IMG/VR virus record: IMGVR_UViG_3300022921_000002
Span: 157,448-221,447 of that record
DNA: 64,000 nucleotides
Direction: 5' to 3' (one strand)
The notes beneath the pieces are model-generated. The model was not told the origin of the DNA. It saw only the letters and a list, made by a program, of their open reading frames with translations, and did not search any database. The position numbers and the translations under genes are program-made. Numbering within the stretch: position 1 is the first letter of the stretch; every line of letters starts with the position of its first letter. Below are positions 1 through 53,776 of this stretch, in pieces.

Positions 1-1
1 T

Positions 2-280
2 TATCTGTGGTTTCATGGTTTATTTAATAATGTATTAGAAGACCCTGCTTGTCAGACAATGTGGAACAAAACTAAACCATGGCTGGCTAATCATAAACCG
101 CTTCCTGAAACACCTGACAACCCACATTGGTTTACACCATATAATGCCAGCCGATGGACAAAAATAAGAAAACAAGGATTGCCATTAACAGGACCTTGTT
201 ATAAATTAGCACATGGAACATCTAGGAGAATGATCCAAGAACCTACTATTATGAGGATATTTAATTATGAAAGTAAATAA
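2..280 (+). CDS. Partial CDS (5' end outside window), C-terminus of a putative capsular-polysaccharide-synthesis-type glycosyltransferase
   Basis: Frame is open from base 2 (YLWFHGLF...PHWF...PCYKL), resembling the Caps_synth C-terminus; adjacent to a GT25 gene. Confidence 0.4.
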   Translation, partial: YLWFHGLFNNVLEDPACQTMWNKTKPWLANHKPLPETPDNPHWFTPYNASRWTKIRKQGLPLTGPCYKLAHGTSRRMIQEPTIMRIFNYESK

Positions 281-1028
281 GTATTATATAATTTATACTA
301 ATGATAACCTATCAAAACAATACGCAAATGATGCTGCCGAGCAATGTAAAAAGCTTGGAGTAAATTATGAGTTATACGAAGGATGGAAACCACAAGGTGG
401 TCCTGGTCAAATGTGGAGAAAGTTTACCGCTGAAACAGGAATTCCAATCAAATCATTTAAAAGAATGATGGTTGGTGCTCATGGTTGTATGGCTTCTCAT
501 TTACAATTATGGCAAAGGATTGTTCAGAATAAAGAATGTGCTGTTATATTAGAACACGATGGGATGATGCTTCATAAAGTAAAGTTGGATATTCCTGATA
601 ACAAAATCGTTGCGTTAGGATACAAATATAGAGAATGGGAAAACTATGACTATAAAACCGCAGGTCAACCCGAAAGAATTAAAGATGTGAAATTTCATCC
701 AGGTTCTCATGCGTATGCTATTACACACATTACCGCGCAGAAAATGATTGATGAAGTAACAAAGGTAGGTGTTACCGAGGCAATTGATAATCGTTGGTTT
801 ATGAGCAGTCGGAAAAATTTTACTAAAATACCAATGGCTATTTGTGATCCTATAGCAGCAATTGGGTGGTTAAGATTATCAACTATTCAGAAATATAGTG
901 CCACTCATAATAATCATGCCGAAATGTTAGAATCTTTTAAGAACAACTTTAAAGGTCAGCTAAAGGAATCAATCGTTATACCCAAAGGGTCTGTAAATAT
1001 TATAAATAGAAACAAAATCAGAGAATAG
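267..1028 (+). CDS. Glycosyltransferase family 25-like protein
   Basis: GCMASHLQLW...VILEHDG and GSHAYAI motifs typical of GT25. Confidence 0.7.
   Translation: MKVNKYYIIYTNDNLSKQYANDAAEQCKKLGVNYELYEGWKPQGGPGQMWRKFTAETGIPIKSFKRMMVGAHGCMASHLQLWQRIVQNKECAVILEHDGMMLHKVKLDIPDNKIVALGYKYREWENYDYKTAGQPERIKDVKFHPGSHAYAITHITAQKMIDEVTKVGVTEAIDNRWFMSSRKNFTKIPMAICDPIAAIGWLRLSTIQKYSATHNNHAEMLESFKNNFKGQLKESIVIPKGSVNIINRNKIRE
1001..1008 (+). promoter_or_regulatory. T4-type late promoter
   Basis: TATAAATA about 30 nt upstream of the ATG at 1038. Confidence 0.7.
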
Positions 1029-1037
1029 AGGTATCTT

Positions 1038-4000
1038 ATGGCAGACGAAAGCAATAAGGACAAAAAGAAAAAGGTTAAGGGATTTAAAGAATTTGATCCT
1101 GGAAACTATATTGATATTGAACCTACTATCAATGAAGCAAAAGTAGGCGAGGTTGTTATTTCTTGGGGACGTATGAACCCTATTACAACTGGGCACGAAA
1201 AACTTATCAATAGAGTTTTAAATGTAGCAAAATCAAAGAATGCTATTCCTGCTGTATTTTTAACACATTCTCAAGATAAAACAAAAAATCCATTGTCATA
1301 TAATGATAAGATCAAATATGCCGAGGTAGCATTTGGTAAAATCATTAAAAGATCAACTGCCAAGACAATCATTCAATTAATGCAGCAGTTACAAAAGAAA
1401 TTTAAAAAGGTAACTCTCGTTGTTGGTTCTGACCGATATAAAGAGATGGATACATTGCTTAACAAATACAATGGTAAAGAATATAAATTTGATGAAATAG
1501 AAGTTGTATCCGCAGGTGCTAGAGATCCTGACGCTGAAGGTGTTAAAGGAATGTCAGCATCAAAAATGCGTGAGTATGCTGTTTCAGATAATATCAAAAA
1601 GTTTACTACAGGATTACCTAGTAAGCTAAAAACAAGCGCGGCCGACATTATGGCCAGCATTAAAAAGGGAATGGGAATGTCGGAAGAATATAACGAAGAT
1701 AACTTTATCGAAGAAGATGAATTAGACGAAGCTTTGACTCGACAGCAGCGTATTAAACGCGGCCGTCAAATGCGAAGAATGCGTGTTAAAATGAAACGAG
1801 GTCGGGAAAAGGCAAAGCGGCGCCGTGCCAATATTGATGTTTTGAAAAGAAGATCAAGAAAAGCAGCACGTAATATAATTAAAAAGCGTCTTGCTGGTAA
1901 TAAACGATATGCTGATATGGAGCCTGCGGAAAAGGAACGTATTGATAAACGCATTGAAAAGATTTCAAAACAACGTATTGATAACCTGGCAATTAAATTG
2001 TTACCTTCTGTTAAAAAGAAAGAACGTGAGAGATTACAAGCACGTCATAATAAGAATGAGTCTGTTGATCTGAATGAGATGTGGGGTGCATATGTAACTA
2101 AGCGACCACATATGCTTATGGATAAAAACAACAAACCAAAGTTTGATAAACGGTTTAAGATGTTTAAACCTAAACAAGTTACAGAGATGAATGAGTTTGA
2201 TATTGAAGATATCGTTGAACTTATGGAATCAGTTGAAAAATTTACCGAAACAACAGGTAAATATTACACAGGTGTTGCTAAAAATAAGAAAGATGACCGT
2301 GAAGATCATTTTGAACGTAATGCTAAAAAGGCTGATGATGATCCTTCAGCATATAGGCCAGCACCAGGTGATAAAGAAGCAAAGACAAAAGAATCAAAGC
2401 ATACAAAAAAAGCACGAGCGATGGGTTACACTGAAGAATTTGATTTTTTAGGTGAAGATGCCGCAGGCAAATCATTAGCTGATAAAGCAAAGAAATCTGA
2501 CATGCCTGCAGGGATTTTACGTAAAGTATATAACCGTGGTGTTGCCGCATGGAAAACAGGTCACCGCCCAGGAACAACACCTGAACAATGGGGACATGCT
2601 CGAGTAAATTCATTTATTACTAAATCCTCTGGTACATGGGGTAAGGCTGATAAAGACCTTGCTGCAAAGGTTAATGAATCAGTAGAAACAGTTAATGAAG
2701 TTAGGAGAAACGCTATGGCTGCCAAGCCTAAGAACACTAAAGCAGAACGTGAGAGTAGACTAGCACAGAATATGAAAAAATTAAAGGATATGCGTAAATC
2801 TGATAAGTCTTGGGGTAAATCAAGCGCATTTGATTATCACGAGGAAGTAGAACTTGACGAATTAACAGCAGCTGAGAAAAAGCTAGTAAATCAAATGTAT
2901 GATAAAAAAGGCAACCTCACACCACATGGTAAAAAAGTAATGAACCACGGTAAGAAAAAAGGTGATAAAGGTTTTGTTGAATCGTTAGATGATAAGTTTG
3001 AAGCATTCATCTCACTTAATGAAGCCGCAACGCCTCAAATGAAAAAGGCAGCTGCAAGTATCGAAGCATATGCAAAGAAAAGCGGTGGCATTGATAAAGC
3101 AGACTTTATGAAAGCAGCAAAGATGCTATCATCTGGTAATGCTGGTATAAAATTCGTTAAATTTGTAGATGATCTTGATACAGAACCACGCGAATGGTTA
3201 ATCACTAATCTTGCTAAGACTATGGGTAAACAAACAGTTGAAAAAATGTTTAAAGTTAAAATCCGTGAAGAAGTAGAACTAGATGAAGCCGAAATGAGCC
3301 TATATGATAAAATAAAGGCAGCAAGAGCAAACCCATCACCAGACAAGCCTGCAAGAGGTCGTGGATCAAAAAATCGTAATCCAAAAACTTATGACCCACG
3401 CAAAGCACTAGACAAAGAAGATGATCGTCTTCAAGGTATGGTAAAGAAAAAATTGAAAAAAGAAGAGTTTGAACTTGATGAAGATCTTACACACCAGACA
3501 GTAAAGCCACCGAATCATACTAAAAAGTTTTCTGGGAAAGATTCTCGTGACACACAAGACACATCGGCGAATGAGTGGGATGCGCCAGGTAATAAGCGTC
3601 ATACTGTAACGAGTAGTCAAGCAGATGCTCATGATAAAACTGCTGCACATCACAATGAGGTTGCGGATGCTCATACAAAGGCAGGCGAAAAATCTTCTAG
3701 TCCAACTTTACAAAGATTGCATCACCAAGCCTCAGTCCATCATAAGAAGGCAGCAGAAGCACACTTTAATGCTTCTCATTCTAGTTCAGGTGCAGATAAA
3801 GATGGTTCTATTCAAAAAAAGGCAAAGGATCTGCATATGGCATACCATCTAACTATGCATGCTAACAAGATGTCTCAAGAAGTAAGAAATAAGGGTTCTA
3901 AAGCAAAGCGTATCCTTGAAGAAGTAGAAGAGCTTGATGAAGATGCTAAAATGAAAAAGCAATCTGATGATAACCTAAAAAGTTTACATAAGCAATTCAA

Positions 4001-4301
4001 AGGTCAAGATCAAAAAATGCCATCAACTCAGCATATGATGAAGCGTATCACTAAAGAAATGAAACGCCGTAATATGGGTGAGTCTGAAGAAGCAGCAAAG
4101 TTAGCATCTGTTGCTAACGGTGGTGTTCAGGATAAAGAAGATAAATTTAGAAATGCATTAAACCGTGTTCGTAATAAAAAATCAATGAAAGATGAAAGCT
4201 CTTGTGGATCATCAAAGAAAAGAAATGAAGAAGCTGGCGCAGGCGAAGAAGGTACAGCTAAATTAGTTAAAAGACTAAAGAAGGATACACCTAATGCATA
4301 G
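1038..4301 (+). CDS. Putative head-packaged polyprotein: N-terminal HxGH-type (cytidylyl/adenylyl)transferase domain plus about 10 basic modules separated by acidic [LIV]xE linkers
   Basis: WGRMNPITTGHEKL...VVGSDR...MSASKMRE nucleotidyltransferase motifs; repeated EEVELDE/EEFELDE/xLNE linkers; late promoter. Confidence 0.7.
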   Translation: MADESNKDKKKKVKGFKEFDPGNYIDIEPTINEAKVGEVVISWGRMNPITTGHEKLINRVLNVAKSKNAIPAVFLTHSQDKTKNPLSYNDKIKYAEVAFGKIIKRSTAKTIIQLMQQLQKKFKKVTLVVGSDRYKEMDTLLNKYNGKEYKFDEIEVVSAGARDPDAEGVKGMSASKMREYAVSDNIKKFTTGLPSKLKTSAADIMASIKKGMGMSEEYNEDNFIEEDELDEALTRQQRIKRGRQMRRMRVKMKRGREKAKRRRANIDVLKRRSRKAARNIIKKRLAGNKRYADMEPAEKERIDKRIEKISKQRIDNLAIKLLPSVKKKERERLQARHNKNESVDLNEMWGAYVTKRPHMLMDKNNKPKFDKRFKMFKPKQVTEMNEFDIEDIVELMESVEKFTETTGKYYTGVAKNKKDDREDHFERNAKKADDDPSAYRPAPGDKEAKTKESKHTKKARAMGYTEEFDFLGEDAAGKSLADKAKKSDMPAGILRKVYNRGVAAWKTGHRPGTTPEQWGHARVNSFITKSSGTWGKADKDLAAKVNESVETVNEVRRNAMAAKPKNTKAERESRLAQNMKKLKDMRKSDKSWGKSSAFDYHEEVELDELTAAEKKLVNQMYDKKGNLTPHGKKVMNHGKKKGDKGFVESLDDKFEAFISLNEAATPQMKKAAASIEAYAKKSGGIDKADFMKAAKMLSSGNAGIKFVKFVDDLDTEPREWLITNLAKTMGKQTVEKMFKVKIREEVELDEAEMSLYDKIKAARANPSPDKPARGRGSKNRNPKTYDPRKALDKEDDRLQGMVKKKLKKEEFELDEDLTHQTVKPPNHTKKFSGKDSRDTQDTSANEWDAPGNKRHTVTSSQADAHDKTAAHHNEVADAHTKAGEKSSSPTLQRLHHQASVHHKKAAEAHFNASHSSSGADKDGSIQKKAKDLHMAYHLTMHANKMSQEVRNKGSKAKRILEEVEELDEDAKMKKQSDDNLKSLHKQFKGQDQKMPSTQHMMKRITKEMKRRNMGESEEAAKLASVANGGVQDKEDKFRNALNRVRNKKSMKDESSCGSSKKRNEEAGAGEEGTAKLVKRLKKDTPNA

Positions 4302-4566
4302 CTTCAAGCAACATTTGGAAGCATGCTGGTCTGATTACAAACAGGTTGGCATGAAGAAAAAAGGTGACAAGATGGTACCTAATTGTGTACCAAAGAATGA
4401 AAGTATTCCACCTGAAGTTGTGGGTGCGGCAATTGCTGCTCCTATGGTTGCACAAGGTATTAAGCATACCGCAAAAGGTGTTGCCAAAGCAGTTAAAGGT
4501 GCTATTAAGGCACGTAGAGCTATTAAGAATGCAGGTCAACGAATTGCTGATAAGGTAGTAAAATGA
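4294..4566 (+). CDS. Small basic putative internal head protein
   Basis: N-terminus MHSFKQHLEA (CTS-like); CWxxYKQVGMKKKGDKMVPNCVP motif. Confidence 0.6.
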   Translation: MHSFKQHLEACWSDYKQVGMKKKGDKMVPNCVPKNESIPPEVVGAAIAAPMVAQGIKHTAKGVAKAVKGAIKARRAIKNAGQRIADKVVK

Positions 4567-4850
4567 AAACATTTAAACAATATATCTTTGCTGAGCATAC
4601 ACAATGTGGAACACCTGATTGTTGTGGTGAATGTGATACCGCCGTTACCGAAGGCTCAGAAACCTGGGAAGCTGGATATAAGCGCCGTGTTGTAAAAACA
4701 ACTGATCCTGACCATAAAGAGGCAGGACATAATTGGCGTATTAAAGGTAAAGATAAATCTCATCTTACTATTAAATTATATAAAGAAAAGCCTTCACAAC
4801 AAGAATTCAATAAACAAATGAAAAGAGTTGCAGGACACGAGTTCGGATGA
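4563..4850 (+). CDS. Small putative internal head protein with Cys cluster
   Basis: N-terminus MKTFKQYIFAE; HTQCGTPDCCGEC motif; overlaps both neighbours. Confidence 0.6.
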   Translation: MKTFKQYIFAEHTQCGTPDCCGECDTAVTEGSETWEAGYKRRVVKTTDPDHKEAGHNWRIKGKDKSHLTIKLYKEKPSQQEFNKQMKRVAGHEFG

Positions 4851-5140
4851 AAAGCTTTAAGCAATATATTTCTGAAGGTATCATGGTTAAACTGATTCGT
4901 GGTAAAGGCCAGGATACTTTAAAAATGAAAGACACTAAAGAAAAGAGTTGGGTTGAATTACGCGGCAAACCTAATTTTGAAACTAAATATGATAAAAGGG
5001 ATCCGTTACATAAAGCAATTACGGCGCTAGGTAAATCGGCAAGCATATCTGATTTTATGAATGGTGATGAAGTAAGTATAAATCCAAACCATCCTGACGG
5101 TAAGAAAGCGTTGGCAACTATAAAGAAGTTAATGAAATGA
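4847..5140 (+). CDS. Small basic putative internal head protein
   Basis: N-terminus MKSFKQYISE; ATGA coupling. Confidence 0.6.
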   Translation: MKSFKQYISEGIMVKLIRGKGQDTLKMKDTKEKSWVELRGKPNFETKYDKRDPLHKAITALGKSASISDFMNGDEVSINPNHPDGKKALATIKKLMK

Positions 5141-5403
5141 AAACATTTAAACAACATATGGAAGCAACATACCAAGGTAAAGAGGTTAAGTTAAACAAAC
5201 CTATGGCGGGTGATGTTGCTAAATCAAAAGTATTCGTTGATCCTGATGGCGACGGTGTTGCTAAAAAAGTTAATTTTGGTGACAAGAATATGACAATTAA
5301 AAAGCATATTCCAGGTCGACGTAAATCTTTTAGAGCAAGACATAATTGCGATAATCCTGGGCCAAAAGATAAGGCACGATATTGGTCTTGTAAAGCCTGG
5401 TAA
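5137..5403 (+). CDS. Small basic putative internal head protein
   Basis: N-terminus MKTFKQHMEA; KKVNFGD...RRKSFRARHNC...ARYWSCKAW domain. Confidence 0.6.
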   Translation: MKTFKQHMEATYQGKEVKLNKPMAGDVAKSKVFVDPDGDGVAKKVNFGDKNMTIKKHIPGRRKSFRARHNCDNPGPKDKARYWSCKAW

Positions 5404-5407
5404 ATAT

Positions 5408-5415
5408 TATAAATA
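5408..5415 (+). promoter_or_regulatory. T4-type late promoter
   Basis: TATAAATA upstream of ORF 5442. Confidence 0.65.
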
Positions 5416-5441
5416 AAACAAACAGCAAATAGAGAAGTAAT

Positions 5442-5786
5442 ATGTATAGTTTTTCAGAACATAGTCTTATTGAACACGTTGAGGCACATCTCATTGAGAA
5501 TGATCTTGTACTTGATAATATAGATGACGAACAACTTGACGAAATCATCGGTATGGCCGCAAAGGCTGTAGGGGCAGTTGCTAAGGTAGGTGCAAAAGGT
5601 GTTCGACGAGCATTAACAAATAAACAAGGTCAATTCCGTTTATCAACTGCTGGGCGTAATACGGCACGTGCTAATAAAGCAAAACGTATTAATGATAGAG
5701 CAAATGCTATCCGTGATAGAAAAACCACAAAGGCGAATATTGACAAGGCCAGAGAAAACTTACGCAAAGCAAGAGAGGGAAAATAA
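5442..5786 (+). CDS. Putative internal head protein (acidic propeptide plus basic domain)
   Basis: Acidic N-terminal part ending QLDE, then an Arg/Lys/Ala-rich domain. Confidence 0.55.
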   Translation: MYSFSEHSLIEHVEAHLIENDLVLDNIDDEQLDEIIGMAAKAVGAVAKVGAKGVRRALTNKQGQFRLSTAGRNTARANKAKRINDRANAIRDRKTTKANIDKARENLRKAREGK

Positions 5787-5787
5787 A

Positions 5788-6351
5788 ATGGACACGAATA
5801 CAGTTAGAGAAGCAATTATTGATGCCCTCGGTCGAGTAGGTGAACTCGACGAAAAGAAAATGGATCCAGTGGGGCAGGCTGACGCAGATATTGATAACGA
5901 TGGAGACGTTGATAATTCAGATGAATATCTTCACAAACGTCGCAAAGCTATCAAAAAGGCTATGAAAGAAGAGCAAGAAGCTCGCTTAAATGAAGCAACA
6001 GCTATGACTGCTGGGCCAAAAGGTAGCTTAGGCGGAATTGGTAAAAAACCATCTATGCCTGCTCCTGGAGATAGTAAAAGAACTATTAATGCTCCAAAAG
6101 GAACCGCACGTCATCATGCCGATATGGCAGCAAAACATCAGCAGTCAGCTGAGCATCACGGAAGAAGAGCATCTGAACATGAGGATGAAGGAAATGATGA
6201 TAAAGCAGATCATCATTATGATAAAATGCAACATCACGATAATGCGGCTGATGCGCATCAGCATGCACAAGATATGATTAAGAAACACGGTTCCGATCAT
6301 CCTGAAGCTCAAAAAGCATCTAAAGAAGCTAATAAGCATAAATTATCATAA
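5788..6351 (+). CDS. Putative internal head protein with EF-hand-like loop and His-rich C-terminus
   Basis: ATG 5788 after GAGG; ELDE and RLNE sites; DADIDNDGDVDNSDE loop; dense His repeats. Confidence 0.55.
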   Translation: MDTNTVREAIIDALGRVGELDEKKMDPVGQADADIDNDGDVDNSDEYLHKRRKAIKKAMKEEQEARLNEATAMTAGPKGSLGGIGKKPSMPAPGDSKRTINAPKGTARHHADMAAKHQQSAEHHGRRASEHEDEGNDDKADHHYDKMQHHDNAADAHQHAQDMIKKHGSDHPEAQKASKEANKHKLS

Positions 6352-6388
6352 GAATAAATAAGAAACCCAAATAAGGAGATAAAAACAA

Positions 6389-6691
6389 ATGGCACTTTGG
6401 GGAAAAACCGACACATTAGCAGATGTTCCAAAATGGTTGGAAGACGACGCTAATAATACAAACAAATCAAATGATCGCGACAACGCGGTGTTTGTTGACC
6501 TTACAGAAGCTGGAGTTGCAGCTAACAGAGCAAAAGGTTTGACAGGTCCGGGCTGGTGGTTGTACCACACATCAAATGGCCGTCATTATGCAGAATGCTT
6601 GGTACCAATGAAAGTATCCGCGGGAGATGCAGGTGACCTTGGTGTAACAGGTGATACTGCTGTTGAAGACTTAATCGTAGCTGATACTTAA
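6389..6691 (+). CDS. Hypothetical, probable virion protein
   Basis: AATAAATA and AAGGAG upstream; MALWGKTD N-terminus. Confidence 0.5.
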   Translation: MALWGKTDTLADVPKWLEDDANNTNKSNDRDNAVFVDLTEAGVAANRAKGLTGPGWWLYHTSNGRHYAECLVPMKVSAGDAGDLGVTGDTAVEDLIVADT

Positions 6692-6707
6692 GTAAAGAAA
6701 ATATAAT

Positions 6708-7082
6708 ATGAAATTAACAGAATCAACCTTTCTGTTATTTGCCGCAAAACATTATGATAATCCACAATGCTCCGACGTATCAGAGTTTGAAGAGGATTTA
6801 AAACGTTTTCATTATTTACGAAAACTATTTGGCAGATATAGGCAAGATAAAGATTTAAAAGAAAGGTTGATTCTGAATCACCTGATAATCATATATAACG
6901 TATTCGGTGAACAAGCAACGAGTATTTTGTTTATGAGACTTTATGAATACCATGATTATTTAAAACCGTTTGTTGAATACTTAAACTTCATGCCTACGGT
7001 TATTGAATATGATGGGATTATTATACACAAGGATAGTATTGTGTCTGATAAGTGTATTAAAGAAAAACTCGAAGGAATTTGA
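6708..7082 (+). CDS. Conserved hypothetical protein of marine T4-like phages
   Basis: FAAKHYDNPQC...ERLILNHLIIIYNVFG pattern recalled from marine T4-like phages. Confidence 0.55.
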   Translation: MKLTESTFLLFAAKHYDNPQCSDVSEFEEDLKRFHYLRKLFGRYRQDKDLKERLILNHLIIIYNVFGEQATSILFMRLYEYHDYLKPFVEYLNFMPTVIEYDGIIIHKDSIVSDKCIKEKLEGI

Positions 7083-7085
7083 CCC

Positions 7086-8222
7086 ATGGTCGTTGATCTA
7101 TTTTTAGTTTACCAATTCATCCGCCGTTTGGCTACACCATTTAATAAGTGGGAAGCATATAAGCAAGGTATTATTGATAAAGATGGTAAAGTATTAATCA
7201 AATCAAAAGATTTTACAAAAGGTTCTCAACGTAAAGCGTGGGGAATTTTTGATAGAATGATTGCTAACCTTAAAAAGTTGTTGGCAAAGGTACCTGGCGG
7301 TAGTTCTCAGTTTGCATCATATGCTGCCGCATTGTTTCTAATTAAAGAATACAAACATTTTACCGATGAATCATTACTAAATGAAGAATGGACTGATGAA
7401 CAATTAGATGAATCAATGCATTTATTTCATATTAGATATAATCATTATACCATACTCTCCGAAAATGTCAATGGTTATTTTGATGAACTTGATGAAAAAC
7501 TTAAAGCATCAGATGATATGGGTGTGTGGGTAAAAGATTTTCAGAAATCAGATGCACCACAATTCAAAGGCAAATCTCAAAAGAAAAGACAACAAATGGC
7601 CGTTGCTGCAAAGCTTGACGCAATGGATGAAGAATTACAAGAAGGCGCATTTAAAAGAATAGCACAAGTGCAATCAAATAAAGCAGATCGTATGGCTTCA
7701 AACGACAAAAAAGGTTTGGATACGTATAAGAAAAAACCAAAAACTGAAATTAAAGAAGCTGCTTCTCCACGTTGGAAAAAAGCTGGACCAAACGGCGAAA
7801 TACAAGCCACTATTGGTGGAAAGAAATATCAAATAGAAAAATCCTTAGATCACAATGAACGCCATAAAGGTGAGTGGAAAGTTATGGTTTGGGATAAGCG
7901 TAGAAACAGCTGGGAGTGGGAAACCACTGAGTACGGTAAAGCCAACGCTAAAGATTGGATTATGGATAGACTAAAAGAATCAGCTACTAATATGCGTAAT
8001 ATAAAACTTGTTAATAAAATCAAGAAGTCTGGTGTTGTAAAATCTGGTTCTATGTCACAGAATGATCCCAAAAAATCTGTTGATACAAAACCTGAAATTA
8101 CAGAAGAAATGCCAGCCAATGCAGTAAGTACCGGTGCAATTGCTAATATGGATGCGTCGGGAATTGATAACAAAAAGAAAAAGAAAAAGATTAAGGATAT
8201 GATGAGGAGAACCCTACAATGA
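7086..8222 (+). CDS. Conserved N-terminal domain plus modular basic segments; second putative processed head protein
   Basis: TPFNKWEAYKQGIIDKDG N-domain; QLDE, ELDE, ELQE, EIKE, RLKE and ITEE boundaries. Confidence 0.55.
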   Translation: MVVDLFLVYQFIRRLATPFNKWEAYKQGIIDKDGKVLIKSKDFTKGSQRKAWGIFDRMIANLKKLLAKVPGGSSQFASYAAALFLIKEYKHFTDESLLNEEWTDEQLDESMHLFHIRYNHYTILSENVNGYFDELDEKLKASDDMGVWVKDFQKSDAPQFKGKSQKKRQQMAVAAKLDAMDEELQEGAFKRIAQVQSNKADRMASNDKKGLDTYKKKPKTEIKEAASPRWKKAGPNGEIQATIGGKKYQIEKSLDHNERHKGEWKVMVWDKRRNSWEWETTEYGKANAKDWIMDRLKESATNMRNIKLVNKIKKSGVVKSGSMSQNDPKKSVDTKPEITEEMPANAVSTGAIANMDASGIDNKKKKKKIKDMMRRTLQ

Positions 8223-9076
8223 TTACTATAGAGCAATTTAGCGCTATGATCCCAACTAACAAAGATCCACAACCGTGGTTTGATGCGGCAGTGGAAAAGT
8301 TTGATGAATATAACATTAATACTCCAAATAGAATTGCAGGCTTTATGGCACAGTGTGCTCATGAGTCAGCAGACTTTACACGTTTAACTGAAAACCTTAA
8401 CTATTCGGAAAAAGCATTGAACTCGGTGTTTAGTCGCTATTTCGGAAAAGGAAAACGAAATGCTAAAGAATACGCTCGAAACCAGGAAAAGATTGCAAAC
8501 TATGTCTATCAAGACGAGTTTAGATCCAAGCGAGGAGCTTTGGGAAACACTGAACCCGGGGATGGCTGGCTATTTAGGGGTAGAGGTATCAAACAGCTTA
8601 CGGGCAGAAATAATTACGCGGCTTTTGGAAAGTCCGTTGGAATGTCAGCCGAGGAAGCTGCAGAATATGTAGCAACACCAAAAGGTGCTATTGAGTCAGC
8701 ATGCTGGTTCTGGGCATCTAATAAACTCGACAAATATGCCGATAATGGTGATAATGTGGGGTTGACAAAAAAGATTAATGGTGGTACAATTGGATTAGAT
8801 GACCGTAACCGTCGTTGGGAATCAGCCTTAGCCATCCTCGGTGGTGAAATGCCTGCACCTAAAAAAGCAGCACCTAAGAAAGCTGCAGGTGTGCGTACAC
8901 TACGCAAAGGTATGAAAGGTGATGACGTTGCTAAAATGCAAAAGGCAATTGGTGTAGGAGCTGATGGCGATTTTGGATTTGGAACTCTTACTGCTGTTAA
9001 AAAATGGCAAAAGATGAACGGATTGGTTGCAGATGGTATTGTAGGTCCTGCTACACAAGCAAAGATGTTTAAATAA
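8219..9076 (+). CDS. Endolysin, GH19 (chitinase-like) domain plus C-terminal peptidoglycan-binding domain
   Basis: AQCAHES, ENLNYS, FRGRGIKQLTGRNNY, INGGTIGLDDR; C-terminal LRKGMKGDDV...ADGIVGPAT. Confidence 0.9.
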   Translation: MITIEQFSAMIPTNKDPQPWFDAAVEKFDEYNINTPNRIAGFMAQCAHESADFTRLTENLNYSEKALNSVFSRYFGKGKRNAKEYARNQEKIANYVYQDEFRSKRGALGNTEPGDGWLFRGRGIKQLTGRNNYAAFGKSVGMSAEEAAEYVATPKGAIESACWFWASNKLDKYADNGDNVGLTKKINGGTIGLDDRNRRWESALAILGGEMPAPKKAAPKKAAGVRTLRKGMKGDDVAKMQKAIGVGADGDFGFGTLTAVKKWQKMNGLVADGIVGPATQAKMFK

Positions 9077-38297: not shown

Positions 38298-38528
38298 ATG
38301 GCAAATCCAAATTACGCATCCTTATTAGCACAAATTGCAGCGGAGACCGATCCCGTTGCTAAAGCAGCTTTGGAAGCACAACTTGTCATTGTCGCAGAAC
38401 TTACAGAAGAAGAAATAGAATTATTTGAGTATACCGCATTTGACTATATTGAATTTAACCCGGGTTATAATAACGAGTTCAAATCATATGTTGGCCAATA
38501 CTTTAATGACGACGGAGATTCAACCTAA
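38298..38528 (+). CDS. Hypothetical acidic virion-associated protein
   Basis: Between PAAR and fibre genes, coupled to the fibre. Confidence 0.5.
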   Translation: MANPNYASLLAQIAAETDPVAKAALEAQLVIVAELTEEEIELFEYTAFDYIEFNPGYNNEFKSYVGQYFNDDGDST

Positions 38529-49419: not shown

Positions 49420-50745
49420 TTAGAACAAGTTAGATACCAATACACGGCGGTAGTACAAGTTGGTGTTTGCTGTAAGAGCACCAAGACCTTGTGAGTCGTG
49501 GTCACCTTCAGCATATGGGTTAGCAACCATACCGTAGCGAGTCTTAAACCCGATTTTTGGTTGGAAGCTGTTTTCACCAACGGCACGAACCATTTGCAAC
49601 GGTACGTATGGGCAATAGAACAAGCCAGCATCAAATGCACTTGAACCTTTATAACCGACAACCAAATAGTTGCTGCCTGCATATGGGTCAATATACACTC
49701 TGTAACGACCGTTAAGAACACCGGCGAATGTGTTGCCTGTATCATCAACTGCCAAGTTGTTACCGTTAAGTGCTGGTGTGTAGTCGAGTACACCGGCCAT
49801 TTGCAATGCTGATGCAACATCAGAAGAACAGATAACCATGTTACCTTTACCACGACGTGTACCTTTTGCGATTGCGTTTGCTTCTTGTTCAATTTGGAAC
49901 ATCAAGCCCTTGAACTTCTCAACAGACCAACGTCCGTTTGCATCAACGTCAAGATCGAATGTACCAGGAGTAGCTGTAGCTGTTGCACCTGCTTTAGCAG
50001 TTGTGTAAATTGTACGAACTAATTCACGGTTGATTTCGACCAAGATTTCTGATTGCAGAATGTTTGCCAGCTCTGTTTCAGCATCCAAACCGTGTACGGC
50101 TTTAAGATCCTGAGCAAGTTCTGTTGTGTATTCTGCTTTCAATGCGCGTGATTTTGCAGTTACGGCAACTTTCTCGATTGAGAATGCCATTTCAGCAAAT
50201 CCTGCACCTACACCGTCGCCCAATGCTTCAGCTGCTGCTGTTGTCATACCTGTACCAGTATTAGCAGTTGCAGCGGAACCAACAGTACCCGCAGATGCGC
50301 CAGCACCTGAGAAGCCTGTTGCTGCTTCGTTGTAGAATGCTTCGTCACCAGCTTGGCTGGTGTAATGCGAACGCATTGCGAAGATCAAGCCTGTTGGGCC
50401 TGTCATAGGTTGAACACCAGCAATGTCATATGCCATCAAGTTTGGCATAGCACGGCGTACCAATGAAATCAGGATAGGATCGTAACCTGCAACAGGACCT
50501 GCTGCAGTTGCGCCTGAACTGAAACCTGCTGGTGCGGAACCTGCAGCATTGGTTGGTGCGGCTTCTGACAACAAGGAGCTCATGCCCACTTGTGTGTCGC
50601 CTGACTCCATAAGAGCCTTTTCTGTGTTTTCAAGAATTGTAGCGGTTACGCTTTTCTTGTGCTGATCGGCGATTGGTGAAAAAGAATCGTGCTCAAGAAT
50701 TGGGCCCCACTTCTCCACAAGCGCTTGATAGTTTGACTGAGTCAT
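49420..50745 (-). CDS. Major capsid protein (T4 gp23-like)
   Basis: LVRRAMPNL, GVQPMTGPTGLIFAMR, AKSRALKAEYT, FYCPYVPLQ, FQPKIGFKTRYG. Confidence 0.98.
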   Translation of the reverse strand: MTQSNYQALVEKWGPILEHDSFSPIADQHKKSVTATILENTEKALMESGDTQVGMSSLLSEAAPTNAAGSAPAGFSSGATAAGPVAGYDPILISLVRRAMPNLMAYDIAGVQPMTGPTGLIFAMRSHYTSQAGDEAFYNEAATGFSGAGASAGTVGSAATANTGTGMTTAAAEALGDGVGAGFAEMAFSIEKVAVTAKSRALKAEYTTELAQDLKAVHGLDAETELANILQSEILVEINRELVRTIYTTAKAGATATATPGTFDLDVDANGRWSVEKFKGLMFQIEQEANAIAKGTRRGKGNMVICSSDVASALQMAGVLDYTPALNGNNLAVDDTGNTFAGVLNGRYRVYIDPYAGSNYLVVGYKGSSAFDAGLFYCPYVPLQMVRAVGENSFQPKIGFKTRYGMVANPYAEGDHDSQGLGALTANTNLYYRRVLVSNLF

Positions 50746-50797: not shown

Positions 50798-51763
50798 TTA
50801 TTTCAAATGTGTTTTAGCATTAAGAGCCTCGACGAGAGCATTAACTGTATAATAATCCGATGCAGGTTTAGCTACAACGGTATCTTCTACAATGATTTCG
50901 TCTTCCTCAACATTAGCATCTTCCGTTACGGCTTTTGCTTCTGCAAAGAATGATTCCTTAAGAGTATTAAGGTTTGCGGTGTACTCTTCGATATTATTAA
51001 AATCGAGCTTTTCAGCAAGAACCTTCATTCTTTCCTGTTGGGTCAGAGTAAGATCCTCAGTGACTTCTGCGAACACTTTTCCGGCTTGCAAAGAAGTGAT
51101 CTCTTTTTGCAATGCAATGTTCTCGTCAATACGAGTATTTGCATCAGTTTTCAATCCTTCAACTTCTTCTTCAAGCTCAGCAACAACATCAATGGTATCT
51201 TCATTGATTGCAATGTTGTGCTCTTCAAAAAGTCCTTTCAGACCGTCCATCAACGATTCTGCCATTTCAACCTTAATGCCGGCTTCGATAGCAACTTCGT
51301 TTTCTGTCATCCACTCTTCTACAACATAGTCGAGATAGGAATCTAGGTTTTCAACAAGGCCATTGACAGTTGAGTCAATTGAAGATTTCATTTCTTCATC
51401 AAGCTGTGTTGAATATTCTTCATTCATTTTGGCAGCTTTTGCCGCAGCACTTTCATTTACTGCTGCTTCAAATACCAAAGTTACTTTTGATTTAAACTCT
51501 TCTGAAAGATCCATGCCTTCAAACATTGCTGAGATTGATTCGTCAAGTTCAACGACTTCTTCTACAACAACTTCTGCATCAGCAGATTCTGCATCTTCTT
51601 TCATTCCAGGTGTTACTGCTGCAATTTTTTCAGGTGTTGGATCAACCTTCTTTGCTACATCAGCCTTGTGTTTTTTTGCCGTACCGCCTTTTGGTGTAAC
51701 AGGATCTTCAACTGAAGAAACACCATCGTCGGCTACAAACTTTTCTTGTAGTTCATCTGACAT
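50798..51763 (-). CDS. Prohead core scaffold protein (gp22-like)
   Basis: Acidic coiled coil; LSEEFKSK, FEAAV, YLDYVVEEWM; synteny. Confidence 0.92.
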   Translation of the reverse strand: MSDELQEKFVADDGVSSVEDPVTPKGGTAKKHKADVAKKVDPTPEKIAAVTPGMKEDAESADAEVVVEEVVELDESISAMFEGMDLSEEFKSKVTLVFEAAVNESAAAKAAKMNEEYSTQLDEEMKSSIDSTVNGLVENLDSYLDYVVEEWMTENEVAIEAGIKVEMAESLMDGLKGLFEEHNIAINEDTIDVVAELEEEVEGLKTDANTRIDENIALQKEITSLQAGKVFAEVTEDLTLTQQERMKVLAEKLDFNNIEEYTANLNTLKESFFAEAKAVTEDANVEEDEIIVEDTVVAKPASDYYTVNALVEALNAKTHLK

Positions 51764-51811: not shown

Positions 51812-52513
51812 TCATTTTCTGAGTGATTCGATAAATTTATTCAACATAGCAGCTGCTTGTGCTTCATCAATCCGCTTGACAACTGTTTTGTATTGTGTTT
51901 CAACTTCTTGTTGAATTTCTTCAATCACTTCAGCAACCTGTTCTTGAACCTGCGCAGGCAACCAAGAAGATGAAGCAATGTCATAAAAGTATTCAACATT
52001 TTCCATAATACCATTTACGAAACAATTAGGGCCAGACGGATCGGTTACAACATCAACAGTAGCTAAATGGAAATCTGATTGAACTTCCATGATACCATCT
52101 TTTGTTGGTTTAACTGAACCAAGTCCACGTGTTGATACACCGACCTGAACTCCTTCGTCAATGAATGTCTTAACAATTTCACCCATTGGAGTACCAAGCA
52201 ATTTTGCTTTACCCATAAAGTTTGAACCATCTCTCCTCATTTCAGTAATCAAATGAGATACACGGTCGCCGTTTACGGTTGGTCCATCAGGGTGACCAAG
52301 TTCCCCAAGAGCTCGTTTGGTTTCAACAAAATCTTTATTGTATCGAACCATTTCTTTCTCAAGGATTTCGGATGGGTAACATCTACCGTTGCGATTGTTA
52401 ATGTCACCTTGCATAAAGATACCTTCAATGAAGTAGGACTTTTTGCCAGTTTCTTCATTTAATTCTGTGCTCGTTGAGGCACTTTCGTTAAAAATTTCTG
52501 TAATAAGTTTCAT
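51812..52513 (-). CDS. Prohead protease (gp21-like)
   Basis: MKLITE, IEGIFMQ, NRNGRCY, ALGELGHP, GVSTRGLGS, DVVTDPS. Confidence 0.96.
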   Translation of the reverse strand: MKLITEIFNESASTSTELNEETGKKSYFIEGIFMQGDINNRNGRCYPSEILEKEMVRYNKDFVETKRALGELGHPDGPTVNGDRVSHLITEMRRDGSNFMGKAKLLGTPMGEIVKTFIDEGVQVGVSTRGLGSVKPTKDGIMEVQSDFHLATVDVVTDPSGPNCFVNGIMENVEYFYDIASSSWLPAQVQEQVAEVIEEIQQEVETQYKTVVKRIDEAQAAAMLNKFIESLRK

Positions 52514-52567: not shown

Positions 52568-53776
52568 TTATTGAAGTGCTTCTCTTGCAAATCCTACAAT
52601 TTCGTCAAAACCTGCTTGATCTTTTTTCATAACGGATTCCATTTGTTTACGGTTTTTTGTATTCAAACCTTTAAACATTGAATTAAGCAATTTTGCATCT
52701 TGAGGTGAAATCCTAGTTGATTTACCGTTGTCAAATTTAAAATTACCAGATTTTACTGCTTCGTCAATCGTAGCTGCTTCATTTTTCTCCCAAGGGGCTT
52801 TTTTCAATGTGACTGCTTTTTTACCCTCTTTGGATGGCGCTGTTGCCTTATCCAATTCTTTTGCAAGTGCAGCACTTTGGCTTTCTTTAACACCACCGCC
52901 AAGAGCCTTTTTGATTAACTCATTTGCTTTAACTTTTTTGACTTCCGACATTTTATCCATGCCATGGTCATCTGTTTGTTTTGCTCTTGTTGTTCTCATA
53001 ACTGTGCGAGTTTTGCCATCAGGACCAGTCATAGTTACTGGTTTTTTTGTAGCAGCTTGAGTTGTTTCCTCAAGTTCTTCGCCCATTGACATTACTTCGG
53101 CTGTTGCATAACTGTAAAGTGTTTGCATTTCTTTTGCCACACCTGCCAATTTGTTTTGAAACCATTCTTCAGGATCTGATGTTTTTGACACATATGCCGC
53201 AATACCTTGCATTGCGTGTGACATTGAACGCAAAGCATTCATCATCATTGGCTTTTCTTCCATTGGGTTTTCAGCAAGATCAACATCTTCTTTCATAGAA
53301 TTTTTATATAGATCCAATGCTTTTGCATATTTTGGATTTTTCATCATACGTTTTGATTCACCGTGATCTGGATTATCGTGTGCCATACGGACCGTAGGCT
53401 CATCCAAGGAATGCTTTTTCATATGTTTCTTATATGCATCAAACTTCTTAGGATCGACGGTCTTGCCAAAGGATTTACTCATTGGTTTCATTGAACGTGA
53501 GATCTCATCAATTTGTTTTGCTTCTTCGCCTAACTTACGACCGCCACCTGCATCTGAACCAGTTTTCTTGATATATGCTGAGTCATATTTTGCATCGGTG
53601 CCATCATCGGCAGGGCGCTTTTTCATAGTTTTACCTTTGATTTCACCAGTAAAAACTGCGTCAGGTGCAACCGGGTGTTTAACTGTTTCAGCATCGTGCA
53701 TATCTTTAAAGCGATTATTTTCATCGGAGCGGTTATGCTTCGATACTTCAGCTAGTTTTTGTTTAAAAGACTTCAT
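52568..53776 (-). CDS. Modular prohead core / internal protein at the gp67-gp68 position
   Basis: Between portal and protease; MKSFKQKLAE N-terminus; QIDE, DLAE, ELEE and TIDE boundaries. Confidence 0.65.
   Translation of the reverse strand: MKSFKQKLAEVSKHNRSDENNRFKDMHDAETVKHPVAPDAVFTGEIKGKTMKKRPADDGTDAKYDSAYIKKTGSDAGGGRKLGEEAKQIDEISRSMKPMSKSFGKTVDPKKFDAYKKHMKKHSLDEPTVRMAHDNPDHGESKRMMKNPKYAKALDLYKNSMKEDVDLAENPMEEKPMMMNALRSMSHAMQGIAAYVSKTSDPEEWFQNKLAGVAKEMQTLYSYATAEVMSMGEELEETTQAATKKPVTMTGPDGKTRTVMRTTRAKQTDDHGMDKMSEVKKVKANELIKKALGGGVKESQSAALAKELDKATAPSKEGKKAVTLKKAPWEKNEAATIDEAVKSGNFKFDNGKSTRISPQDAKLLNSMFKGLNTKNRKQMESVMKKDQAGFDEIVGFAREALQ

What the first reader, a model, noticed from the sequence alone, without database searches (positions are those of the whole stretch)
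2841..3941. Near-identical DNA linkers between polyprotein modules suggest cassette shuffling
Seen: GAGGAAGTAGAACTTGACGAA (2841-2861), GAAGAAGTAGAACTAGATGAA (3267-3287), GAAGAGTTTGAACTTGATGAA (3462-3482) and GAAGAAGTAGAAGAGCTTGATGAA (3918-3941) flank mutually unrelated modules, all in frame. Inference: these about 21-nt microhomologies could allow in-frame gain, loss and swapping of cargo modules, behaving like an integron-style array inside a single ORF.
Basis: partly seen in the sequence, partly recalled or inferred. Interest (0 to 1): 0.6.

Follow-up and report, generated by a model that had tools for sequence, protein, structure and literature searches.

The report
Protease-site linkers in phage cargo polyprotein
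The repeated 21-base stretches encode a short acidic peptide that most likely marks where a marine T4-like phage's head protease cuts a 1087-residue packaged polyprotein into separate basic cargo proteins, and related phages have reshuffled those cargo modules with the joins falling on these linkers.

Summary
All four copies sit in frame at the stated coordinates in ORF 1038-4301, and a fifth lies at 1710-1730. No such matches are expected by chance.

The window comes from a 221-kb marine T4-like myovirus. The linkers encode K-E-E-V-E-L-D-E, which ends in the I/L-x-E signature cut by T4-type prohead protease gp21. The protease gene is in the window. The scaffold protein gp22 carries the same motif. 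The linkers fall in low-confidence gaps between confidently folded, basic domains. The homologue of the first module was detected in cyanophage virions.

The DNA likeness equals the codon-usage expectation: 34 identical codons observed against 34.4 expected. It is therefore a by-product of the conserved peptide.

More than 5000 homologues show about 50 module orders. Fifty-seven percent of sharp homology breakpoints lie at such sites, against 11% by chance. DNA blocks 98-99.7% identical to the window begin and end inside linker codons.

It is not integron-like, since the genome has no integrase and no attC. Cleavage and packaging are inferred, not shown. I read it as a polyprotein variant of the T4 internal-protein system.

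The parts
1038..4301 (+). Polyprotein ORF of 1087 aa (P0001). Order: N-propeptide, cytidylyltransferase-like M1, very basic M2a, DUF5824 region M2b-M2d, then M3a, M3b, M4, His-rich M5 and M6.
   Evidence: An identical ORF occurs on an independent metagenome contig, L003.
1128..1136 (+). I-N-E site ending a 33-residue N-terminal propeptide. It is conserved as [IL]-x-E followed by A in relatives.
   Evidence: AF2 pLDDT is below 50 for residues 1-32.
1710..1730 (+). Fifth linker copy, EEDELDE (aa 225-231), between M1 and M2a.
   Evidence: The low-pLDDT segment 217-230 covers it.
2070..2078 (+). Candidate weaker site, D-L-N-E followed by M (aa 345-347).
   Evidence: The low-pLDDT segment 341-359 covers it.
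2448..2456 (+). Candidate weaker site, F-L-G-E followed by D (aa 471-473).
   Evidence: The low-pLDDT segment 458-473 covers it.
2673..2699 (+). Degenerate linker NESVETVNE (aa 546-554), where relatives have RKEEVELDE or RKEEVEMDE. The 98% identity blocks with L030 and L031 end at its first codon.
2841..2861 (+). Linker 1, EEVELDE (aa 602-608). The 98.75% identity block with L030 starts at 2851, inside it.
3015..3023 (+). L-N-E followed by AATPQ (aa 660-662), between M3a and M3b. Relatives have EEVELDE or IDE here. Identity blocks end at 3010 and start at 3016 and 3020.
3267..3287 (+). Linker 2, EEVELDE (aa 744-750), at the end of the highly conserved M3b module. L029 stops matching L006 at its last base.
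3462..3482 (+). Linker 3, EEFELDE (aa 809-815), between M4 and M5.
   Evidence: A low-pLDDT stretch runs from residue 810.
3918..3941 (+). Linker 4, EEVEELDE (aa 961-968), between M5 and M6. Identity blocks of 97-98% with L030, L031 and L018 start at 3927, inside it.
4294..5786 (+). Array of five small, mostly overlapping genes with T4-CTS-like N-termini ending in [LIM]-x-E: 4294-4566, 4563-4850, 4847-5140, 5137-5403 and 5442-5786.
   Evidence: (34-nt repeat D5).
4847..4877 (+). CTS-coding repeat at which an HD-domain gene cassette present in L030 and L031 is absent here. The junction lies in a 5-nt stretch inside two repeats that are 24/32 identical.
51812..52513 (-). Prohead protease, a T4 gp21 homologue (Peptidase_S77).
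   Evidence: 125.7 bits, over the curated cut-off.
50798..51763 (-). Head scaffolding protein (gp22-like). It carries the same extended motif, EEVVELDE, at 51539-51562.
   Evidence: (phrog_237, E = 2e-70).
52568..53776 (-). 402-aa internal-protein-like gene between portal and protease. Its N-terminus ends in L-A-E in the CTS pattern. Residues 207-276 share a module with polyprotein tails of relatives.
49420..50745 (-). Major capsid protein (gp23-like), with an L-S-E followed by AA site at about residue 61.

Best explanation
The window belongs to a 221-kb marine T4-like myovirus. ORF 1038-4301 encodes a polyprotein of capsid-internal (injected) cargo proteins.

The repeated roughly 21-nt strings encode a conserved peptide linker with consensus K/R-E-E-V-E-L-D-E, usually followed by Ala. 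Its last three residues are the I/L-x-E signature after which T4-type prohead protease gp21 cuts.

Inferred mechanism. The polyprotein is taken into the prohead core. The phage's gp21 homologue then cuts at 5 strong and about 5 weaker sites. This releases a cytidylyltransferase-like enzyme, a very basic 14-kDa peptide, a DUF5824 domain and several small basic proteins of unknown function. These would stay with the DNA and enter the host on infection.

The nucleotide similarity follows from the conserved peptide plus the genome's strong codon bias (GAA 79%, GAT 74%). Because each module works only after release, module order is free, so the array evolves combinatorially.

Relatives show gain, loss, tandem duplication, permutation and replacement of modules, with joins at the linkers, mostly between the EEVE half and the LDE half. 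The joins arise through homologous recombination in shared modules and probably through short-homology recombination in the linker-coding or CTS-coding repeats. Selection then keeps only in-frame joins that retain a cleavable site.

Shown here: the motif and its enrichment, its position between predicted domains, the presence of the protease, the variation in architecture and the positions of the breakpoints. Inferred: packaging, cleavage, injection and the recombination mechanism.
For: - Lineage and protease. The Peptidase_S77 (gp21) and Gp23 families are found in the window. The closest phages are Pelagibacter phage HTVC008M, Melnitz and cyanomyoviruses.
- Specificity. T4 gp21 cuts after Glu in I/LxE motifs (PMC12991175). 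In the T4 capsid targeting sequence, residues 8 and 10 govern processing (PMC9026906).
- Motif conservation. The motif logo from 93 distinct sites in relatives has Glu invariant at P1, Leu/Ile/Met at P3, acidic residues at P4, P6 and P7, and Ala favoured at P1'.
- Motif elsewhere in the genome. The same extended motif occurs in the scaffold gp22, and ELDE is almost confined to these two proteins.
- Structure. In the AF2 model every strong linker lies in or at the edge of a low-confidence stretch (mostly pLDDT below 50) between confident domains. Folded alone, M3b is a helical bundle (pLDDT 88) with a disordered linker tail.
- Charge. All predicted fragments except the N-propeptide are basic, with pI 7.8-11.7, as T4 internal proteins are.
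- Stand-alone modules. Separate-gene versions of modules in relatives start with CTS-like peptides ending in the same [LIV]-x-E.
- Virion evidence. The Syn19 homologue of M1 (T4-GC190) has a CTS-like N-terminus ending L-N-E. GC190 was detected in purified S-SM1 virions (PMC3037559 text and supplement).
- Neighbouring genes. A CTS-bearing small-gene array follows the polyprotein. The 402-aa head-module protein shares a module with polyprotein tails of relatives.
- Codon test. Observed 34 identical codons against 34.4 expected.
- Shuffling.
Against: - No experiment shows that this protein is packaged or cleaved. The virion evidence is for a 42%-identical cyanophage homologue of one module only.
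- The extreme N-terminus of P0001 is not a canonical T4-type CTS. An FKEF core sits behind a Lys-rich extension.
- T4 gp21 needs few determinants, so the strong conservation of the extra EEVE part needs a further reason, such as targeting, docking or recombination. That reason is not identified.
- The Leu codon of the linker is CTN in 16 of 17 distinct contexts against about 50-60% background. This small DNA-level residual may reflect common descent of the linkers, or some DNA-level constraint.
- The protease-substrate complex prediction never ran (8 calls from 57 to 96).
Confidence: 0.75

Rival explanations
1. The linkers are conserved primarily as DNA. The roughly 21-nt microhomologies act as recombination sites that drive in-frame cassette gain, loss and swapping, like an integron array inside one ORF.
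For: - Breakpoints between 98-99.7% identical genomes fall inside linker codons.
- L020 has a tandem duplication of a module plus linker, with unit borders at the linkers.
- The spacer between EEVE and LDE varies by 0-3 residues, as imprecise joins would give.
- In the adjacent small-gene array, an HD-gene indel has its junction inside two roughly 30-nt CTS-coding repeats.
- The Leu codon is biased to CTN.
Against: - Synonymous similarity among the copies equals the codon-usage expectation.
- E, V and D codons in 20 distinct linker contexts follow background usage.
- The peptide is conserved where the DNA is not.
- The same peptide occurs in the scaffold protein, where no shuffling is at issue.
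- The genome has no integrase and the region has no attC.
- The one resolvable recent exchange used a 104-nt identical tract, mostly module sequence.
- Selection for cleavable in-frame joins would place surviving breakpoints at linkers whatever the mutational mechanism.
Confidence: 0.15
2. The linkers are uncleaved acidic spacers or docking motifs in a large multidomain protein. They might be flexible hinges, or motifs that bind the scaffold or DNA-binding partners. The protein would then act as one chain.
For: - The linkers are predicted to be disordered and acidic, between basic domains.
- The EEVE part is more conserved than gp21 specificity alone requires.
Against: - Strict conservation of Glu at P1 and Leu/Ile/Met at P3, with Ala favoured at P1', fits a protease site better than a spacer.
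- The same modules occur as separate genes whose N-terminal peptides end in the same [LIV]-x-E.
- Module order is freely permuted, which is hard to reconcile with one cooperative multidomain machine.
Confidence: 0.08
3. The repeats are chance low-complexity matches in an acid-rich, AT-rich coding region.
For: The genome is 37% G+C, and Glu and Asp codons are strongly biased.
Against: - Zero of 100 DNA shuffles give any match.
- Residue shuffles give 0.047 expected against 5 observed.
- The motif is conserved at module borders across hundreds of relatives.
Confidence: 0.01

Closest known systems
T4 internal proteins (IPI, IPII, IPIII, Alt) with the N-terminal capsid targeting sequence, processed by prohead protease gp21
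   Same: - A gp21-family protease is encoded in the genome.
- The I/L-x-E cleavage signature is present at module borders.
- The cargo is small, basic and highly diverse.
- The adjacent small genes and the stand-alone module homologues carry CTS-like N-termini.
- The cargo locus is hypervariable between close relatives (PMC3012670, PMC9026906).
   Different: - Here up to about ten cargo modules are concatenated in one 1087-residue ORF and separated by internal sites.
- The internal site is an extended acidic motif (KEEVELDE), not the T4 N-terminal 10-mer.
- Cleavage would leave the acidic tail on the upstream fragment.
- Neither packaging nor cleavage has been shown.
PeSL (promoter-stem-loop) cassettes and the PeSL-like elements at T-even IP loci (Arbiol et al. 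2010, PMC2839356; Repoila et al. 1994, as cited there)
   Same: - Short conserved repeats flank variable cassettes in hyperplastic regions of T4-type genomes.
- Indels between near-identical phages have junctions in the repeats.
- The authors themselves drew the integron analogy.
   Different: - PeSLs are intergenic regulatory elements made of a promoter plus a stem-loop.
- Here the repeats are coding, in frame and conserved as peptide.
- Their DNA similarity is no more than codon usage predicts.
Extensively processed inner-body and ejection proteins of giant phages (phiKZ, 201phi2-1, SPN3US)
   Same: - A gp21-related protease cuts many head-internal proteins after Glu at a short motif.
- Propeptides can hold several sites (PMC5694885, PMC9026906).
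   Different: - Their motif is S/A/G-x-E or A-x-E.
- Processing there mostly removes N-terminal propeptides from single proteins.
- It is not described as cutting apart a string of unrelated, shuffled modules.
Integron gene-cassette arrays
   Same: An ordered array of unrelated cargo units is bounded by short repeated elements, and the content varies among relatives.
   Different: - There is no IntI-type recombinase.
- There is no attC or attI.
- The units are not separate ORFs.
- Expression is by one translation product plus proteolysis, not by a common promoter.

Membership tests
T4-type capsid-internal proteins processed by gp21 | A gp21-family (Peptidase_S77) prohead protease is encoded by the same phage. 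| tested here: met
   125.7 bits, over the curated cut-off, at window 51812-52513 (-).
T4-type capsid-internal proteins processed by gp21 | Cleavage signature I/L-x-E, with the cut after Glu, at the borders of the mature products. | tested here: met
   Five ELDE sites plus INE, LNE (twice) and VNE lie at module borders in P0001. The logo from 93 distinct sites in relatives agrees. The specificity is cited from PMC12991175.
T4-type capsid-internal proteins processed by gp21 | An N-terminal capsid targeting sequence of about 10 residues ending in the cleavage site. | tested here: inconclusive
   P0001 has a 33-residue N-terminal peptide ending I-N-E, with an FKEF core behind a Lys-rich extension. 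This is not the canonical form. Stand-alone homologues (Syn19_174, L012, L026) and the neighbouring small genes do have the canonical form.
T4-type capsid-internal proteins processed by gp21 | Physical presence in the virion. | not testable with these tools
   Only indirect evidence exists. The M1 homologue family T4-GC190 was detected in purified S-SM1 virions (PMC3037559).
T4-type capsid-internal proteins processed by gp21 | Actual proteolytic processing at the sites. | not testable with these tools
   The complex prediction of protease with linker never ran (8 calls from 57 to 96). Testing this needs mass spectrometry or an in vitro cleavage assay.
Integron | An IntI tyrosine recombinase. 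| tested here: not met
   no PF00589 match in the 221-kb genome, which CheckV rates as 100% complete. The control search hit 14 of 14 reference genomes.
Integron | attC recombination sites bounding promoterless cassette ORFs. | tested here: not met
   no Rfam family reaches its gathering score in bases 1-9000. The units lie in frame inside one ORF.
PeSL cassettes of T4-type phages | An intergenic early promoter plus a stem-loop flanking each cassette. | tested here: not met
   The repeats are coding and in frame. No promoter or terminator scan was run.
Cytidylyltransferase-like nucleotidyltransferases (module M1 only) | A match to PF01467 with the H-x-G-H nucleotide-binding motif. | tested here: met
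   PF01467 at 23.7 bits against a cut-off of 21, over residues 43-143. T-T-G-H is seen at residues 50-53. phrog_3041 matches at E = 4e-83.

The most novel reading that the evidence does not exclude
Marine T4-like phages carry a previously undescribed way of organising injected cargo. Unrelated effector modules are strung into one polyprotein and separated by a dual-purpose linker. The linker peptide is the prohead-protease cut site and possibly also the packaging signal. Its coding sequence, together with highly conserved portable modules such as M3b, serves as the in-frame joint at which modules are exchanged between phages. The result would be a combinatorial effector array that evolves like a cassette system without any dedicated recombinase.
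Probability: 0.4. Interest if true: 0.75.

Novelty: new variant of a known kind. Interest (0 to 1): 0.62.

Why it matters
T4 internal proteins are injected with the DNA, and some disarm host defences. IPI*, for example, inhibits a restriction enzyme (PMC3012670).

If this reading is right, the very abundant marine T4-like phages package a much larger and more fluid repertoire of injected proteins than gene counts suggest. That repertoire would be hidden inside genes annotated as "cytidyltransferase" or "NMN adenylyltransferase". The word search returned 5114 homologues from 8000 scored candidates.

The linker motif gives a simple sequence rule for cutting these polyproteins into candidate effectors. 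It also gives a way to recognise other packaged proteins in metagenomes. The rule makes testable predictions for virion proteomics.

The finding also offers a clean natural case for asking whether short conserved coding motifs steer recombination, or only filter its products.

Tried and rejected
- Complex prediction. Complex prediction for the gp21 homologue with residues 589-628 of the polyprotein came back busy eight times and never ran, so there is no result either way.
- Function of the most mobile module, M3b. The feature search in the ESM Atlas gave only unnamed viral clusters at scores of 0.80 or below. phmmer of the whole protein against PDB sequences gave nothing. Foldseek of the M3b model against PDB gave no match with E below 2.5. 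Its function stays unknown.
- Gapped BLAST for mapping module borders was abandoned, because it ran alignments through non-homologous stretches. Ungapped HSPs were used instead.
- My first display of one junction was out of register because of 3 gaps (first panel). It was redone with MAFFT.
- Chance or low complexity was rejected.
- An integron was rejected.
- Alternative genetic codes were not needed. The ORF is open under table 11.
- Literature. Searches for polyprotein with prohead protease, and for DUF5824, found no prior description. This library misses most subscription journals, so absence is weak evidence.
Full report
**Observation**

All lie in the frame of one ORF, 1038-4301 on the + strand, which encodes 1087 residues (P0001). 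They encode EEVELDE, EEVELDE, EEFELDE and EEVEELDE.

A consensus 21-mer with up to three mismatches finds exactly these four places in the 64-kb window. It finds none in 100 dinucleotide-preserving shuffles.

A fifth copy, EEDELDE, lies at 1710-1730. Weaker sites of the same type lie at 1128-1136, 2070-2078, 2448-2456, 2673-2699 and 3015-3023. These weaker sites have a hydrophobic residue, any residue and then Glu, behind acidic residues.

E[LI]DE occurs five times in the protein against 0.047 expected from residue shuffles. In the whole proteome of the genome, ELDE occurs eight times. Five are in this protein and one is in the head scaffold protein. The modules between the linkers are not related to each other.

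**Where it sits**

The window is the last 64 kb of a 221,447-bp IMG/VR virus record. It is a T4-like myovirus.

- The window holds a Gp23 major capsid gene.
- It holds a Peptidase_S77 (gp21) prohead protease at 51812-52513.
- It holds a gp22-type scaffold gene at 50798-51763, plus a portal gene and likely tail sheath and tube genes, which were not scanned.

The nearest cultured phages by tblastn are Pelagibacter phage HTVC008M, Methylophilales phage Melnitz and many cyanomyoviruses.

P0001 starts with a cytidylyltransferase-like domain (PF01467; phrog_3041, E = 4e-83). It contains DUF5824 at residues 408-540. The rest has no family.

**What the linkers are**

The peptide consensus was built from 93 distinct sites in 121 family members. 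It is K/R-E-E-V-E-L-D-E, usually followed by Ala. Glu is invariant at the last position, and Leu, Ile or Met sits two residues before it.

That is the signature of T4 gp21, which cuts after Glu in I/LxE motifs (PMC12991175). In the T4 capsid targeting sequence, residues 8 and 10 govern processing (PMC9026906).

Several further observations fit a protease site.

- The same extended motif, EEVVELDE, occurs in this phage's own scaffold protein. The T4 counterparts of this scaffold and of the major capsid protein are head proteins processed by gp21 (gp23 in PMC9026906; gp22 from general knowledge).
- The major capsid protein has L-S-E followed by AA at about residue 61.
- The 402-residue protein encoded between portal and protease starts with a 10-residue peptide of the T4 CTS pattern, ending L-A-E.
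- In an AlphaFold2 model built on 76 homologues, the confident domains are 34-216, 235-340, 474-550, 609-637 and 663-745.
- The segments with pLDDT below 50 include 1-32, 217-230, 341-359, 458-473, 551-568, 585-607, 810-923 and 960-977. Four of the five strong linkers and most weak sites therefore lie in those flexible gaps. Linker 2 (744-750) sits at the edge of M3b, where mean pLDDT is about 61.
- Folded alone, module M3b is a five-helix bundle (pLDDT 88) whose last four residues, in the linker, are disordered.
- Cutting at the ten sites would give a 3.8-kDa acidic N-terminal peptide (pI 5.3) and ten fragments of 6-22 kDa. All ten are basic, with pI 7.8 to 11.7, as T4 internal proteins are.

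**Evidence that the family is packaged**

Evidence that the family is packaged is indirect.

- Syn19_174 is the cyanophage homologue of module M1 (42% identity, T4-GC190). It begins with a 10-residue peptide ending L-N-E followed by A, the same pattern as the T4 CTS.
- Sullivan et al. 2010 detected the GC190 "citidylyltransferase" in purified S-SM1 virions. The supplementary table marks it as detected (PMC3037559).
- In relatives where modules are separate genes, those genes start with CTS-like peptides ending in [VI]-E-E (L008, L010, L012, L026).
- Directly after the polyprotein lie five small genes, from 4294 to 5786. Their products start with the pattern M-[KHY]-[ST]-F-[KS]-[QE]-[YH], followed after one to three residues by [LIM]-x-E. 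This is what a T4-type internal-protein locus looks like.
- The head-module 402-residue protein shares a 70-residue module (53-60% identity, E about 1e-15) with the polyprotein tails of relatives.

**Is the DNA more alike than the peptide requires?**

It is not. I compared codons at positions carrying the same amino acid among the five copies.

- Thirty-four of 61 codon pairs are identical.
- The genome's codon usage predicts 34.4.
- Redrawing codons 20,000 times gives P = 0.55.

Across 20 distinct linker contexts from related contigs, the Glu, Val and Asp codons follow background usage.

There is one residual. The Leu codon is CTN in 16 of 17 contexts, against about 50-60% in comparable contexts. 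These sites are not independent, so I treat this as weak.

**Do relatives differ at the linkers?**

They do. The word-based protein search returned 5114 homologues of 0.55-1.75 times the query length, from 8000 scored candidates.

Among 236 non-redundant proteins and ORFs, about 50 different module orders occur.

- The front end (propeptide, M1, M2a, M2b, M2c) is fairly constant.
- The tail is variable. M3a, M3b, M4, M5 and M6 are present, absent or permuted. The usual order is M3b-M3a, but here it is M3a-M3b.
- The tail modules are interspersed with modules that this genome lacks.
- Some relatives encode M1, M2a or M3b as separate genes.

I collected sharp homology ends from ungapped HSPs with at least 80% identity. 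I removed small indels and counted each junction context once. Of 787 junctions, 57% lie from 9 residues before to 2 residues after the Glu of an acidic [LIMV]-x-E site. Random positions give 11%. The conserved linker itself will extend HSPs by a few residues, so the resolution is "within the linker" and no finer.

**DNA-level breakpoints**

Three contigs are 98-99.7% identical to the window over long blocks. Those blocks begin or end as follows.

| Window position | Where it falls |
|---|---|
| about 2672-2688 | First codon of the degenerate linker at 2673-2699 |
| 2851 | Inside linker 1 |
| 3010, 3016, 3020 | Around the LNE site at 3015-3023 |
| 3269 | Start of linker 2 |
| 3927 | Inside linker 4 |

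Only one boundary, 2296 in L004, is not at a site in this genome. There the relative carries a linker (KEEVEMDE) at the break.

The identity usually starts at the L-D-E codons. The joint therefore lies between the EEVE half and the LDE half. Consistent with this, the spacer between the two halves varies from 0 to 3 residues in about 20% of distinct sites.

One relative, L020, has a tandem duplication of a 74-residue module plus linker (88% identity), with the unit borders at the linkers.

**How the joins arise**

One recent event can be resolved with three genomes.

- L029 equals L006 (99.75%) up to the last base of linker 2.
- L029 equals the window (99.7%) from the site before M3b onward.
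- Informative sites place the crossover in window 3171-3274.
- That is a 104-nt tract identical in all three genomes, made of the 3' part of M3b and the first 8 nt of the linker.

This is ordinary homologous recombination in a shared module. M3b is unusually conserved: 84-99% identical in polyproteins that are otherwise about 50% identical. It can therefore act as portable homology.

A second event lies in the small-gene array. L030 and L031 carry an extra 188-residue HD-domain gene with a CTS-like start. The window lacks it. The junction lies in a 5-nt stretch inside two CTS-coding repeats that are 24/32 identical. Short conserved coding motifs at this locus do therefore coincide with in-frame cassette gain or loss.

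I cannot tell whether the 21-nt linker sequence raises the rate of such events. The alternative is that only joins keeping a cleavable linker survive.

**Comparison with known systems**

The closest system is the T4 internal-protein, CTS and gp21 system. Its internal proteins are highly diverse and share only the targeting sequence (PMC3012670). Its loci are hypervariable, with more than 30 variants flanked by PeSL-like elements (PMC2839356).

The differences here are the concatenation of many modules in one ORF, the extended internal acidic motif, and repeats that are coding rather than regulatory.

Giant-phage inner-body proteins are also cut many times after Glu, but at A/S/G-x-E, and mostly to remove propeptides (PMC5694885).

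An integron is excluded. The genome has no tyrosine recombinase, bases 1-9000 have no Rfam hit, and the units are not separate ORFs.

I found no description of such polyproteins in the searchable library. That library is incomplete.

**Verdict**

- The claim that the DNA similarity is special is not supported.
- The integron analogy fails on its defining features.
- The most likely function of the linkers is proteolytic processing of a packaged cargo polyprotein by the phage's gp21-type protease. I put this at about 0.75. It is inferred from sequence, structure prediction, genomic context and literature on homologues. It has not been shown experimentally.

**Limits of this analysis**

- No reads-based test could be run.
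- No complex prediction could be run (8 calls from 57 to 96).
- All translations used table 11.

Noticed in passing
window 4294-5786: There is an array of five small, mostly overlapping genes whose products start with a T4-CTS-like peptide ending in [LIM]-x-E. A 34-nt repeat (4552-4585 and 5126-5159, 88% identical) covers the ribosome-binding site and the CTS codons of two of them. It looks like an internal-protein locus.
   Followed up: partly
window 4847-4877; L030 6174-6740; L031 6588-7154: Contigs 98% identical to the window carry an extra 188-aa HD-domain gene with a CTS-like start between the 95-aa and 97-aa genes. The indel junction lies inside the CTS-coding repeat.
   Followed up: yes
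window 3024-3287 (module M3b): This 88-residue module is 84-99% identical among polyproteins that are otherwise about 50% identical. It also occurs in separate genes in some relatives. It folds as a five-helix bundle with no PDB match, and its function is unknown. It may be spreading horizontally or be under very strong constraint.
   Followed up: partly
window 52568-53776 (-): A 402-aa protein is encoded between portal and prohead protease. It has no PHROG match, a CTS-like N-terminus and several acidic L/I-x-E sites. Residues 207-276 are homologous to a module in the polyprotein tails of relatives.
   Followed up: partly
window 5668-6351 and 7086-8222: Two further ORFs contain ELDE. The first matches phrog_764, which is annotated as cytidyltransferase, and resembles the start of Syn19_175. 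That protein is a second polyprotein-like cyanophage gene with EEQLDE and EEVELLDE sites. Neither ORF was analysed further.
   Followed up: no
window 1-1028 and G000 about 155700-158475 (upstream of the window): A cluster of two sulfotransferases, a Caps_synth/Gly_transf_sug glycosyltransferase and a Glyco_transf_25-like gene lies directly upstream of the polyprotein and is conserved in L003, L004, L030 and L031. L029 instead carries a methyltransferase, a Gly_transf_sug gene, one sulfotransferase and a weak Glyco_transf_25 match. These genes might modify DNA or a virion glycan.
   Followed up: no
G000 152351-153580 (about 4-5 kb upstream of the window): A 409-aa gene has a CTS-like N-terminus ending L-N-E followed by A. 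Its homologues lie next to the polyprotein gene in L012, L014 and L026.
   Followed up: no
L020 (IMGVR_UViG_3300035135_000885), residues 603-749 of its 1254-aa polyprotein: There is a tandem in-frame duplication of a 74-residue module plus linker (88% identity), with the unit borders exactly at the linkers.
   Followed up: yes
linker Leu codons: window 2853-2855, 3279-3281, 3474-3476, 3933-3935, and relatives: The Leu codon of the linker is CTT or CTA in 16 of 17 distinct contexts, against about 50-60% CTN in comparable contexts genome-wide. This is the only DNA-level residual beyond codon bias. The sites are not phylogenetically independent.
   Followed up: partly
window 38528-43789 (+): There is a 1753-aa ORF, the largest in the window. 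It was not examined.
   Followed up: no
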